From positions 1 to 64,000 of the IMG/VR virus record IMGVR_UViG_3300048571_000088: a stretch of 64,000 bases of DNA; one strand, given 5' to 3'. The notes below the pieces were generated by a model, which was not told the DNA's origin, did no database searches, and worked only from the letters and a program-made list of their open reading frames with translations. Shown here piece after piece: positions 37,731-37,844 of this stretch (its first letter is position 1; every line of letters starts with the position of its first letter). Made by a program: the position numbers and the translations under genes.

Positions 37731-37844
37731 TGGAAACTAAAGACAGGACTTGAACCTGTAATTGTTGTAATAGTAAATAACTTACATACTACAAACCTCC
37801 GACTTTTTAGGTCAGAGCTGTTTACCTTTTACAGCACTTTAGTT
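37731..37844 (-). tRNA. Atypical tRNA-like gene (8-bp acceptor, 6-bp anticodon stem, very long variable arm)
   Basis: AACUAAAG/CUUUAGUU-U-CCA; GCUGU/ACAGC D stem; UCUGAC-CUAAAAA-GUCGGA; ACAGG-UUCAAGU-CCUGU. Confidence 0.65.

What the first reader, a model, noticed from the sequence alone, without database searches (positions are those of the whole stretch)
37731..37844. Sec-like 8/5 tRNA architecture with an AAA-register anticodon and ~37-nt variable arm next to DUF2828
Seen: 8-bp acceptor + 5-bp T stem, 5-bp D stem, 6-bp anticodon stem with loop CUAAAAA, a long paired variable arm, U73 and encoded CCA. Known: the 8/5 fold is characteristic of bacterial tRNA-Sec. Alternatively it is a tRNA-Leu(UAA) with a 9-nt loop. 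Fully paired stems suggest function (inference), e.g. frameshift suppressor or decoy.
Basis: partly seen in the sequence, partly recalled or inferred. Interest (0 to 1): 0.6.

Follow-up and report, generated by a model that had tools for sequence, protein, structure and literature searches.

The report
Phage tRNA mimic beside Ro60-like gene
A jumbo phage carries a conserved, oddly built tRNA-shaped RNA gene (one extra base pair in the acceptor arm, long extra arm, A-rich anticodon loop) directly in front of a gene for a Ro60-like RNA-binding protein and its small Y-RNA-like hairpin, so it is most likely a tRNA mimic of an RNA quality-control or repair module and not a selenocysteine or ordinary decoding tRNA.

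Summary
On the minus strand, 37844..37731 folds into a cloverleaf with an 8-bp acceptor stem, 5-bp T stem, 4-5-bp D stem, 6-bp anticodon stem, loop CUAAAAA and a 30-nt paired variable arm, followed by U and an encoded CCA. Rfam's tRNA model scores it 38.3 bits against a cut-off of 29.

It is a real gene. One other phage lineage has it at the same place. All 29 pairs are kept there, and 6 pairs show compensatory double changes, including the sixth anticodon-stem pair.

It is not tRNA-Sec. The anticodon, discriminator and D arm are wrong, the model score is below threshold, and the genome has no SelA or SelB.

Loop position 33 varies (U or C) between close relatives, and the discriminator varies (U or A). 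Both argue against a standard decoder.

The neighbouring DUF2828/DUF7788 protein has the Ro60 fold (TROVE plus vWA). A small stem-loop lies between the tRNA-like RNA and that gene. It belongs to a covarying family that accompanies DUF2828 genes across distant phages, and it resembles Dictyostelium Class I RNAs.

Best reading, at confidence 0.45: a non-decoding tRNA mimic of a phage Ro60/Y-RNA-type module. No expression data could be obtained.

The parts
37731..37844 (-). Whole tRNA-like RNA gene, 114 nt including the encoded CCA
   Evidence: Rfam tRNA 38.3 bits. MFE cloverleaf, z = -3.46. Own covariance model R1 scores it 112.5 bits and its homologues 124-129 bits, with the next best hit at 39 bits.
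37837..37844 (-). Acceptor stem, 5' strand (8 nt), pairing with 37735-37742
   Evidence: Two of the 8 pairs change on both sides in the homologues. The outermost A-U pair never varies.
37817..37835 (-). D arm: stem of 4-5 bp and a loop of 9-11 nt with the GG of ordinary tRNAs
   Evidence: The fifth pair (U-A) is G/A in the relatives. A14, A15, G18, G19 and A21 fit the Rfam register.
37798..37816 (-). Anticodon arm: 6-bp stem and the 7-nt loop CUAAAAA (37804-37810)
   Evidence: The sixth pair changes from U-A to C-G in the relatives. The second loop base is U, C or U in three variants, while the run of five A is invariant.
37760..37797 (-). Variable region (38 nt): linker GGU, a paired arm at 37765-37794, then a conserved 3' linker within the block UUACAACAAUU
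   Evidence: The relatives have a shorter arm of 6 bp that keeps pairing through G-U changes. The 3' block is invariant.
37743..37759 (-). T arm: 5-bp stem, loop UUCAAGU
   Evidence: Three of the 5 pairs show compensatory changes.
37731..37742 (-). Acceptor 3' strand (37735-37742), unpaired U (37734) and encoded CCA (37731-37733)
   Evidence: The relatives have A in place of U, and CCA in the same register.
37678..37722 (-). Small Y-RNA-like (Class-I-RNA-like) stem-loop between the tRNA-like RNA and the start codon. The arms are AGAUUAG and CUAAUCU, with the motif GUCAGCAA after the 5' arm and GA after the 3' arm.
   Evidence: Model R2 scores it 37.3 bits, one of only 3 simple copies in the 242.6-kb genome. 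The same element precedes DUF2828 genes in L018, L027, L031, L035, L043 and others.
36191..37663 (-). Gene for a 490-aa Ro60-like protein (DUF2828 plus DUF7788)
   Evidence: Pfam. phrog_850 'RNA-binding protein', E = 2.6e-128. AlphaFold2 pLDDT 92.6. The top Foldseek matches are Ro60 structures over the full length, TM 0.5-0.59, including the Thermus phage phiLo Ro60 and Deinococcus Rsr.
37839..38174 (-). Upstream 111-aa ORF of unknown function. Its TAA stop codon lies inside the acceptor 5' strand.
   Evidence: A 111-aa gene sits in the same place before DUF2828 in L018, L019 and L026.

Best explanation
The element is a conserved, non-decoding tRNA mimic that belongs to a phage Ro60/Y-RNA-type module.

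Proposed mechanism:
1. The RNA is transcribed on the minus strand, probably together with the small stem-loop that follows it and possibly with the mRNA of the Ro60-like protein.
2. Because it folds like a class II tRNA, host tRNA-end-processing enzymes (RNase P at the 5' end, 3' trimming down to the encoded CCA) cut it out. That cut also frees the 5' end of the downstream Y-like hairpin.
3. The mature RNA has a 13-bp acceptor/T branch, a 6-bp anticodon stem and an A-rich loop. It then plays the part that the tRNA-like domain plays in YrlA-type Y RNAs: it engages or competes for tRNA-binding enzymes, or for host anticodon nucleases, while the adjacent stem-loop and the Ro60-like ring form the RNP.

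Shown here: the structure, its conservation with compensatory changes, the Ro60 fold of the neighbouring protein, and the tight genomic coupling of the stem-loop family with DUF2828 genes.

Inferred: expression, processing, binding to the Ro60-like protein, and lack of aminoacylation.
For: - **Real structured RNA.** Rfam tRNA 38.3 bits, z = -3.46. Homologues lie upstream of DUF2828 genes in L021-L023 and L036/L037. All 29 pairs are kept and 6 pairs change on both sides. The RNA is 87% identical in aligned columns, while the flanking proteins are only 60% identical.
- **Loose decoder constraints.** Loop position 33 is U or C between near-identical relatives. The unpaired base before CCA is U or A. 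The anticodon AAA combined with a long variable arm matches no known identity set (own knowledge).
- **Neighbour is a Ro60 homologue by fold**.
- **Published Ro60 loci carry tRNA-like Y RNAs next to the gene.** This holds in phages too (PMC4201824, PMC12135203, PMC7824862).
- **A cultured relative has YrlA-like RNAs.** Enterococcus phage EfsSzw-1 has tandem YrlA-like units directly upstream of its DUF2828 gene: Rfam YrlA 46.2 and 34.4 bits, below the cut-off of 69.
- **The stem-loop beside the target belongs to a covarying family found next to DUF2828 genes in many distant phages**.
- **Other lineages also have a long tRNA-like RNA in this slot.** These are different RNAs, immediately upstream of DUF2828 in L024, L026 and L028.
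Against: - Only two lineages carry this particular RNA. The closest relatives by protein identity (L018/L019 at 65%, L027 at 57%) lack it.
- The region is dense in tRNA genes, so adjacency alone is weak evidence.
- The molecule has a complete anticodon arm, canonical D- and T-loop nucleotides and an encoded CCA. A chargeable tRNA would have all of these.
- It has no Ro-binding 5'-3' stem of its own, and Rfam YrlA does not match it.
Confidence: 0.45

Rival explanations
1. It is a working class II tRNA, charged by an anticodon-blind synthetase such as SerRS or LeuRS. It would read UUU with anticodon AAA, or Leu codons in a shifted register, and so act as a phage-encoded missense, recoding or codon-supply tRNA.
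For: It has a complete cloverleaf with U8, A14, A15-U48, G18G19, a T-loop consensus and an encoded CCA. Purifying selection acts on all its stems. The loop polymorphism U/C would give UAA or CAA, both Leu anticodons, if the anticodon sat one base to the 5' side. The best non-family hits of model R1 are phage tRNA-Ser genes. The genome is AT-rich, so UUU and UUA codons should be common (codon counts were not made).
Against: U33 is not conserved. The base before CCA is not conserved. A 13-bp acceptor/T branch is otherwise known only from tRNA-Sec, which EF-Tu does not deliver to the ribosome (own knowledge). An unmodified A34 is very rare in bacteria (own knowledge). Ser or Leu inserted at UUU would damage the phage's own proteins. 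The RNA is absent from the closest relatives, so it is dispensable.
Confidence: 0.2
2. It is only a processing signal. A tRNA-shaped punctuation mark recruits RNase P and 3' processing enzymes to separate the upstream mRNA from the downstream Y-like hairpin and Ro60-like mRNA. The excised RNA itself has no role.
For: In this phage and its relatives, Y-like stem-loops regularly lie 3-15 nt after tRNA 3' ends. Different tRNA-like RNAs occupy the same slot before DUF2828 in different lineages. The upstream ORF's stop codon lies inside the acceptor stem.
Against: Punctuation does not explain conservation of the A-rich loop, the sixth anticodon-stem pair, the variable arm and its invariant 3' block. 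An encoded CCA in register is also not needed for it.
Confidence: 0.15
3. It is a decaying pseudogene of a class II tRNA, for example tRNA-Leu(UAA) with U34 changed to A.
For: CUAAAAA differs from a typical Leu(UAA) loop by one base (own knowledge). The RNA is absent from some close relatives. ARAGORN misses it by default.
Against: No stem pair is broken in either lineage, although the neighbouring protein has diverged by 40%. Six pairs are compensated. The same AAAAA loop occurs in both lineages.
Confidence: 0.08
4. It is a selenocysteine tRNA or a Sec-like recoding tRNA.
For: It has an 8/5 branch, a long variable arm and a 6-bp anticodon stem. The homologue in L021 gets its best clan hit from the Rfam tRNA-Sec model.
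Against: The anticodon is AAA, not UCA. The discriminator is U or A, not G. The D arm has a large loop with GG rather than a 6-bp stem with a 4-nt loop. tRNA-Sec scores 26.1 bits against a gathering score of 47. The genome has no SelA or SelB.
Confidence: 0.01

Closest known systems
YrlA-type Y RNAs with Ro60 orthologues (Rsr): bacteria, mycobacteriophages, Thermus phage phiLo Yrl1/Yrl2 (PMC4201824, PMC12135203)
   Same: A tRNA-like RNA is encoded directly upstream of a Ro60-fold protein gene. It has D- and T-arm mimicry. In M. smegmatis, RNase P cleavage and a CCA end are documented. Several small RNAs lie in tandem before the gene.
   Different: In YrlA the 5' and 3' ends form the Ro-binding stem, and the acceptor-like stem is closed by a loop. 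Here the ends form an 8-bp acceptor stem with CCA, the anticodon arm is complete, and the candidate Ro-binding stem-loop is a separate neighbouring element. Rfam YrlA does not match the target. The protein belongs to the DUF2828/DUF7788 branch, not Pfam TROVE.
Bacterial tRNA-Sec (8/5 fold, Rfam RF01852)
   Same: A 13-bp acceptor/T branch made of 8 + 5 pairs, a long variable arm, an extended anticodon stem, and a 4-nt single-stranded 3' end.
   Different: The anticodon is AAA. The discriminator is not G73. The D arm is ordinary, with a large loop. The model score is below threshold. The genome has no Sec machinery.
allo-tRNAs and other irregular tRNAs with 8/4 or 9/3 branches, some of them in phages (PMC5389517)
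   Same: A lengthened acceptor stem, a long variable arm, anticodons that do not match the body's identity, and a suggested role as suppressors or regulatory RNAs.
   Different: Those RNAs keep a 12-bp branch by shortening the T stem. This one has a full 5-bp T stem and therefore 13 bp.
Dictyostelium Class I RNAs (Rfam RF01414; PMC7919456). This comparison concerns the adjacent stem-loop, not the tRNA-like RNA itself.
   Same: A short terminal stem whose structure is conserved but whose sequence is not. An AAG start and a CUG(U) end. The motif CU-N-ACAGCAA directly after the 5' strand. An A/U-rich variable loop. A length of about 45-65 nt. Rfam hits of 29.4, 28.6 and 24.0 bits.
   Different: The hits are below the gathering score of 41.5. 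The source is a phage rather than an amoeba. The copy next to the target has the weaker motif GUCAGCAA. Homology is not shown.

Membership tests
tRNA (Rfam RF00005) | Cloverleaf with conserved D- and T-loop nucleotides, scoring above the gathering score of 29 bits | tested here: met
   38.3 bits over model positions 1-71.
tRNA (canonical elongator) | 7-bp acceptor stem plus 5-bp T stem (12-bp branch), with N73-CCA directly after pair 1-72 | tested here: not met
   CCA follows 8 possible pairs plus one free base in all four sequences. The other CCA-encoding tRNA genes of this phage have 7 pairs.
tRNA (canonical elongator) | Invariant U33 in a 7-nt anticodon loop | tested here: not met
   U in the window and in L036/L037; C in L021-L023.
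tRNA (canonical elongator) | Aminoacylation and decoding | not testable with these tools
tRNA-Sec (RF01852) | 8/5 (13-bp) acceptor/T branch with a long variable arm | tested here: met
   The eighth pair is not tested by covariation.
tRNA-Sec (RF01852) | Anticodon UCA and discriminator G73 | tested here: not met
   The loop is CUAAAAA or CCAAAAA, and the base before CCA is U or A.
tRNA-Sec (RF01852) | 6-bp D stem with a 4-nt loop; score above the gathering score of 47 bits | tested here: not met
   The D stem has 4-5 bp and the loop 9-11 nt. The homologue scores 26.1 bits, and for the target the tRNA model wins the clan competition.
tRNA-Sec (RF01852) | Sec machinery (SelA, SelB) available in the genome | tested here: not met
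   PF03841 and PF09107 are absent from the 242.6-kb genome. The host is unknown.
allo-tRNA (PMC5389517) | 12-bp branch arranged as 8/4 or 9/3 | tested here: not met
   The T stem has 5 pairs, 3 of them covarying.
YrlA / Y RNA (RF02553) | Encoded next to a Ro60 orthologue | tested here: met
   The RNA lies 68 nt upstream of a protein whose model matches Ro60 structures over its full length. The arrangement is the same in L021-L023 and L037.
YrlA / Y RNA (RF02553) | The 5' and 3' ends pair to form the Ro-binding stem of the same molecule | tested here: not met
   The ends form the acceptor stem with CCA. A separate stem-loop follows at 37678-37722.
YrlA / Y RNA (RF02553) | Score above the gathering score of 69 bits | tested here: not met
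   There is no YrlA hit on the target at E up to 10. Related units in Enterococcus phage EfsSzw-1 reach 46.2 and 34.4 bits.
YrlA / Y RNA (RF02553) | Physical binding to the Ro60-like protein | not testable with these tools
   This needs RIP, CLIP or EMSA.
Dictyostelium Class I RNA (RF01414), for the adjacent stem-loop family | Short 5'-3' stem, 11-nt motif after the 5' strand, AAG start and CUGU end, score above 41.5 bits | tested here: inconclusive
   The layout and motif are shared, and the stem covaries. The scores are 29.4, 28.6 and 24.0 bits, all below the gathering score.

The most novel reading that the evidence does not exclude
DUF2828/DUF7788 proteins are a separate branch of Ro60-like rings with their own class of Y-type RNAs. 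That class is defined by a short covarying terminal stem, an AAAG start, the motif UAACAGCAA after the 5' strand, and a UCUG end.

In these phages the module appears in four forms: free-standing; closing a tRNA core in place of the acceptor stem; circularly permuted inside tRNA anticodon loops; and next to the 8/5 tRNA mimic studied here.

Dictyostelid Class I RNAs carry the same signature and have so far been thought unique to social amoebae. They might therefore be Y-type partners of the same protein family. The 8/5 RNA would then be the tRNA half of a split Y RNA.
Probability: 0.2. Interest if true: 0.85.

Novelty: new variant of a known kind. Interest (0 to 1): 0.62.

Why it matters
Ro60 and Y RNAs are an old puzzle in RNA quality control and autoimmunity, and bacterial and phage versions are only beginning to be studied.

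This locus adds two things. First, a tRNA mimic with a 13-bp acceptor branch, otherwise known only from tRNA-Sec, that keeps normal tRNA ends. Second, evidence that the large DUF2828/DUF7788 family (thousands of phage proteins) is Ro60-like and travels with a recognisable small RNA.

Cultured Enterococcus phages carry the same gene with YrlA-like RNAs, so the system can be tested at the bench.

If the resemblance to Dictyostelium Class I RNAs reflects a shared protein partner, it would suggest a function for an abundant eukaryotic RNA class whose molecular role is unknown.

Tried and rejected
- **Pattern scans for the anticodon arm.** Exact-pattern scans of IMG/VR, JGI metagenomes and GTDB genomes found only chance hits: a terminator and a coding region (L032/L033), L038 and Larkinella coding sequence. 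The exception was the true homologues L036/L037.
- **BLAST against GenBank phages.** blastn of the element found nothing beyond T-arm fragments.
- **Wider searches with model R1.** R1 found no further family member in about 30 loci or in five distant jumbo-phage records.
- **Distant DUF2828 loci from IMG/VR.** These show no tRNA-like RNA directly upstream at Rfam gathering scores.
- **Expression data.** No reads were laid, and I did not try another route.
- **Sigma-70 promoter scan.** The scan around the element gave no more sites than shuffled sequence. One 9/12 match ends 23 nt upstream of the element.
- **Variable arm as a copy of the inserted module.** The motifs are in the same order (GUAA, then ACAACAA), but the arms do not pair as the module requires, L021 lacks the GUAA, and R2 does not hit it. 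I keep this only as a weak lead.
- **Kissing between the AAAAA loop and U-runs of the Y-like loops or tRNA-Lys(UUU).** The complementarity is A-U only, and the adjacent stem-loop has no U-run. This remains speculation.
- **Hammerhead or other known ribozymes in the inserts.** Rfam shows no hit at E up to 5.
- **Literature.** Searches for DUF2828 and for a Dictyostelium Ro60/TROVE link gave nothing useful.

Full report
**Setting.** The window is the first 64 kb of a 242,588-bp IMG/VR virus record that CheckV rates as complete. It is AT-rich, 28-33% G+C. Genes in the region run on the minus strand.

**The observation.** It has an 8-bp acceptor stem, one U, a D stem of 5 bp, a 6-bp anticodon stem closing the loop CUAAAAA, and a 38-nt variable region with a long interrupted stem. 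A 5-bp T stem with loop UUCAAGU follows, then the acceptor 3' strand, one U and CCA. The energy is -29.8 kcal/mol, z = -3.46, and no shuffle of 200 folds as well.

Rfam's tRNA model scores it 38.3 bits against a gathering score of 29. In that alignment U8, A14, A15, G18G19, A21, U48 and the T loop are in their ordinary places, so the core should form an L shape. ARAGORN overlooks the gene by default. With introns allowed it draws the same 8 acceptor pairs, discriminator U, CCA and anticodon AAA. The other CCA-encoding tRNA genes of this phage have 7-pair acceptor stems, so the extra pair is particular to this gene.

**Is it a real gene?** I traced relatives through the neighbouring protein and fetched their contigs.
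- One lineage, whose protein is 60% identical, has a clear homologue of the RNA at the same place, just upstream of the same gene. It is present as L021, L022 and L023, and as L036 and L037 from a pattern scan of metagenomes.
- A covariance model built from these sequences scores family members at 112-129 bits and everything else at 39 bits or less.
- On the four distinct sequences, all 29 pairs of the 8/5 structure are standard pairs in every sequence. Six pairs change on both sides: two in the acceptor stem, three in the T stem, and the sixth pair of the anticodon stem, which goes from U-A to C-G. Sliding the partners by one to three columns drops pairing to 39-56%.
- The RNA is 87% identical in aligned columns, while the flanking proteins have diverged by 40%.

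This is purifying selection on structure, which excludes a pseudogene. The family is nevertheless rare.
- The closest relatives by protein identity (L018/L019, L027) have no such RNA between the same two genes.
- GenBank phages have nothing similar.
- Pattern hits in IMG/VR and GTDB genomes were chance matches.
- Five distant jumbo-phage records have no member.

**What it is not.** It is not tRNA-Sec.
- The anticodon position reads AAA.
- The free base before CCA is U here and A in the relatives.
- The D arm has a large loop with GG.
- The Rfam tRNA-Sec model gives only 26.1 bits to the L021 homologue, against a gathering score of 47.
- The genome has neither SelA nor SelB.

It is not an allo-tRNA in the sense of PMC5389517, because those keep a 12-bp branch (8/4 or 9/3), and here the T stem has five covarying pairs.

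**Signs against ordinary decoding.** Between near-identical relatives the second loop base, which would be U33, is C in L021-L023 and U in L036/L037 and in the window. The five A's never change. The base before CCA also varies. An AAA anticodon on a class II body fits no known identity set, and a 13-bp branch is otherwise confined to tRNA-Sec, which needs its own elongation factor (both from own knowledge). Decoding is not excluded. In a register shifted by one base the polymorphism reads UAA or CAA, both leucine anticodons, but one polymorphism proves nothing.

**The neighbourhood changes the picture.** The 490-aa product of 36191-37663 matches DUF2828 and DUF7788 and PHROG 850, 'RNA-binding protein'.
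- An AlphaFold2 model built on 41 homologues has pLDDT 92.6.
- Its best matches in the PDB are Ro60 structures over the whole length. They include frog Ro60 with Y RNA or misfolded RNA, human Ro60, Deinococcus Rsr and the Ro60 of Thermus phage phiLo, with TM 0.5-0.59.
- Ro60 orthologues of bacteria and phages are encoded next to Y RNAs, at least one of which mimics tRNA. In Mycobacterium smegmatis that RNA is cut by RNase P and receives CCA (PMC4201824). The phiLo protein binds two Y-like RNAs encoded just upstream of its gene (PMC12135203). A survey of jumbo phages notes TROVE proteins with a tRNA-like partner as part of RNA repair systems (PMC7824862).
- Further downstream in the window lie a PP-loop (TilS-like) enzyme, TelA and a PTH2 peptidyl-tRNA hydrolase. 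An RNA ligase gene lies at about 5.3-5.8 kb. In relatives, RNA ligase genes flank the DUF2828 gene.

**A second RNA between the tRNA mimic and the gene.** Positions 37722-37678 form a stem (AGAUUAG with CUAAUCU), with GUCAGCAA after the 5' arm and GA after the 3' arm. The same design occurs at 25425-25487, at 26374-26440 and in many related contigs: UUAAAGA, four or five variable bases, UAACAGCAA, an A/U-rich loop, the complementary bases, then UCUG.
- In an alignment of 14 copies, three stem positions covary: A-U/U-A/C-G, A-U/G-C/C-G and C-G/U-A. The copies were collected with a filter that required pairing, so the evidence is the variety of pair types, not the percentage paired.
- A covariance model of the element (R2) finds copies the filter had not seen, and they lie beside DUF2828 genes in phages whose proteins are only 33-48% identical to the window's. 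Upstream copies are in L006, L008, L012, L013, L016, L031, L035 and L043, often two in tandem. Downstream copies, within about 300 nt, are in L002, L005, L007 and L017.
- In the complete 120-kb record G005, the only strong hit of the whole genome is the one beside the DUF2828 gene. In the window's own genome there are just three simple copies.
- In the cultured Enterococcus phage EfsSzw-1, the 680-nt gap upstream of the annotated DUF2828 gene holds three tandem units. Each is closed by a stem of this kind, with ACAGCAA or ACAGCGA after the 5' strand. Two of them enclose a T arm, an acceptor-like hairpin and a D arm, and match Rfam YrlA at 46.2 and 34.4 bits, below the cut-off of 69.

I take the stem plus motif to be the Y-RNA-type module of this protein family, and the copy at 37722-37678 to be a minimal Y-like RNA of the Ro60-like gene. 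That is inference from co-occurrence.

**Resemblance to Dictyostelium Class I RNAs.** The only Rfam family that notices these stem-loops is Dicty_Class_I_RNA: 29.4 and 24.0 bits in the window and 28.6 bits in L028, against a gathering score of 41.5. Its consensus has the same layout: a short terminal stem beginning GA and ending UC, then UG, with CUUACAGCAA right after the 5' strand and an A/U-rich loop. PMC7919456 describes Class I RNAs as about 60 nt long, with a stem conserved in structure but not in sequence, an AAG start, a CUGU end and an 11-nt motif. It also reports that they were found only in dictyostelids. The phage elements begin AAAG and end UCUG(A/U). I could not test whether this is homology, convergence on a shared partner, or chance.

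**How the target fits.** The module decorates tRNA bodies of this phage in several ways.
- At 30597-30717 it replaces the acceptor stem of a tRNA core (Rfam tRNA 36 bits over model positions 6-65).
- In four tRNA genes it sits, circularly permuted, in the anticodon region. The 3' arm ending UCUG is joined through UA to AAGA plus the 5' arm, making a GUAA-capped hairpin followed by ACAGCAA.
- The target is the only long tRNA-like RNA here without such an insert, and it is followed 12 nt after its CCA by the minimal stem-loop.
- In other lineages the slot before DUF2828 is occupied by insert-bearing tRNAs instead (L024, L026 and L028).
- The invariant block at the 3' side of the target's variable arm (UUACAACAAUU) resembles the motif, but the arm does not fold like the module and R2 does not match it. 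That link is only a lead.

**Conclusion.** The best-supported explanation is a non-decoding tRNA mimic that is processed like a tRNA and acts within the Ro60-like/Y-like RNP. It would function like the tRNA-like domain of YrlA, but as a separate molecule with normal tRNA ends. I put this at 0.45. A true, unusual class II tRNA stands at 0.2, a mere processing signal at 0.15, a pseudogene at 0.08 and tRNA-Sec at about 0.01. The remainder is left for readings not considered here.

**What is missing.** There is no evidence on expression, RNA ends, charging or binding. 

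Noticed in passing
window 25425-25487 (-), 26374-26440 (-), 37678-37722 (-); also L012, L013, L016, L017, L018, L024, L026, L027, L028, L031, L035, L043: A family of 45-70-nt stem-loops: UUAAAGA, a variable arm, UAACAGCAA, an A/U-rich loop, the complementary arm, then UCUG. The arms covary. The elements usually lie a few nt after a tRNA 3' end and/or beside a DUF2828 gene. Rfam notices them only as sub-threshold Dictyostelium Class I RNA.
   Followed up: partly
window 26442-26563, 27838-27958, 40587-40712, 43772-43878 (all minus strand): tRNA genes with 30-60-nt inserts in the anticodon region. Each insert is a circularly permuted copy of the stem-loop module: a GUAA-capped hairpin followed by ACAGCAA, closed by a short helix. 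In the L028 homologue of the first one, removing the insert would leave a perfect tRNA-Pro(UGG) loop, so these may be a new kind of small tRNA intron or tRNA/Y-RNA chimeras.
   Followed up: partly
window 30597-30717 (-) and 23203-23348 (-); L036 914-1037 (-), L024 6233-6346, L026 4328-4443: The same stem and motif enclose larger inserts. At 30597-30717 the insert is a tRNA core (D, anticodon-like and T arms) whose acceptor stem is replaced by the module, a layout like that of YrlA.
   Followed up: partly
window 29813-29898 (-) and 44461-44549 (-); PP-loop gene 35449-36093 (-): Two tRNAs with anticodon CAU carry a paired variable arm, which is unusual for Met or Ile tRNAs. A TilS-like PP-loop ATPase gene lies two genes after the Ro60-like gene and is syntenic in relatives (L018, L021, L023).
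   Followed up: no
L042 (Enterococcus phage EfsSzw-1, MH791397.1) about 4960-5400 (-): Three tandem unannotated YrlA-like units lie in the gap between a tRNA cluster and the annotated DUF2828 gene of a cultured Schiekvirus. This offers a bench-ready system for the DUF2828/Ro60-like idea.
   Followed up: partly
window about 25490-25565 (-), 45155-45232 (-), 62595-62668 (-): Further aberrant tRNA-like sequences: one with loop CUAAUAA and a poor D arm; one with an 8-nt loop holding UUAA; and one called Phe(AAA) by ARAGORN with G at position 33. None of them reaches the Rfam gathering score.
   Followed up: no
window 33477-35075 (-), 5306-5803 (-): Genes for translation and RNA care cluster around the tRNA region: PTH2 peptidyl-tRNA hydrolase, TelA and an RNA ligase (PF09414). 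The genome has no RtcB and no CCA-adding enzyme.
   Followed up: partly
L021 5527-5757, L026 1-212; L018 and L027: In relatives, HEARO RNAs with IscB-like HNH genes and several TnpB (OrfB_IS605) genes sit right beside the DUF2828 gene. The locus is a hot spot for mobile elements.
   Followed up: no
window 37839-37844: The TAA stop codon of the upstream 111-aa ORF lies inside the 5' strand of the acceptor stem, so the coding sequence and the RNA gene overlap by 6 nt.
   Followed up: no
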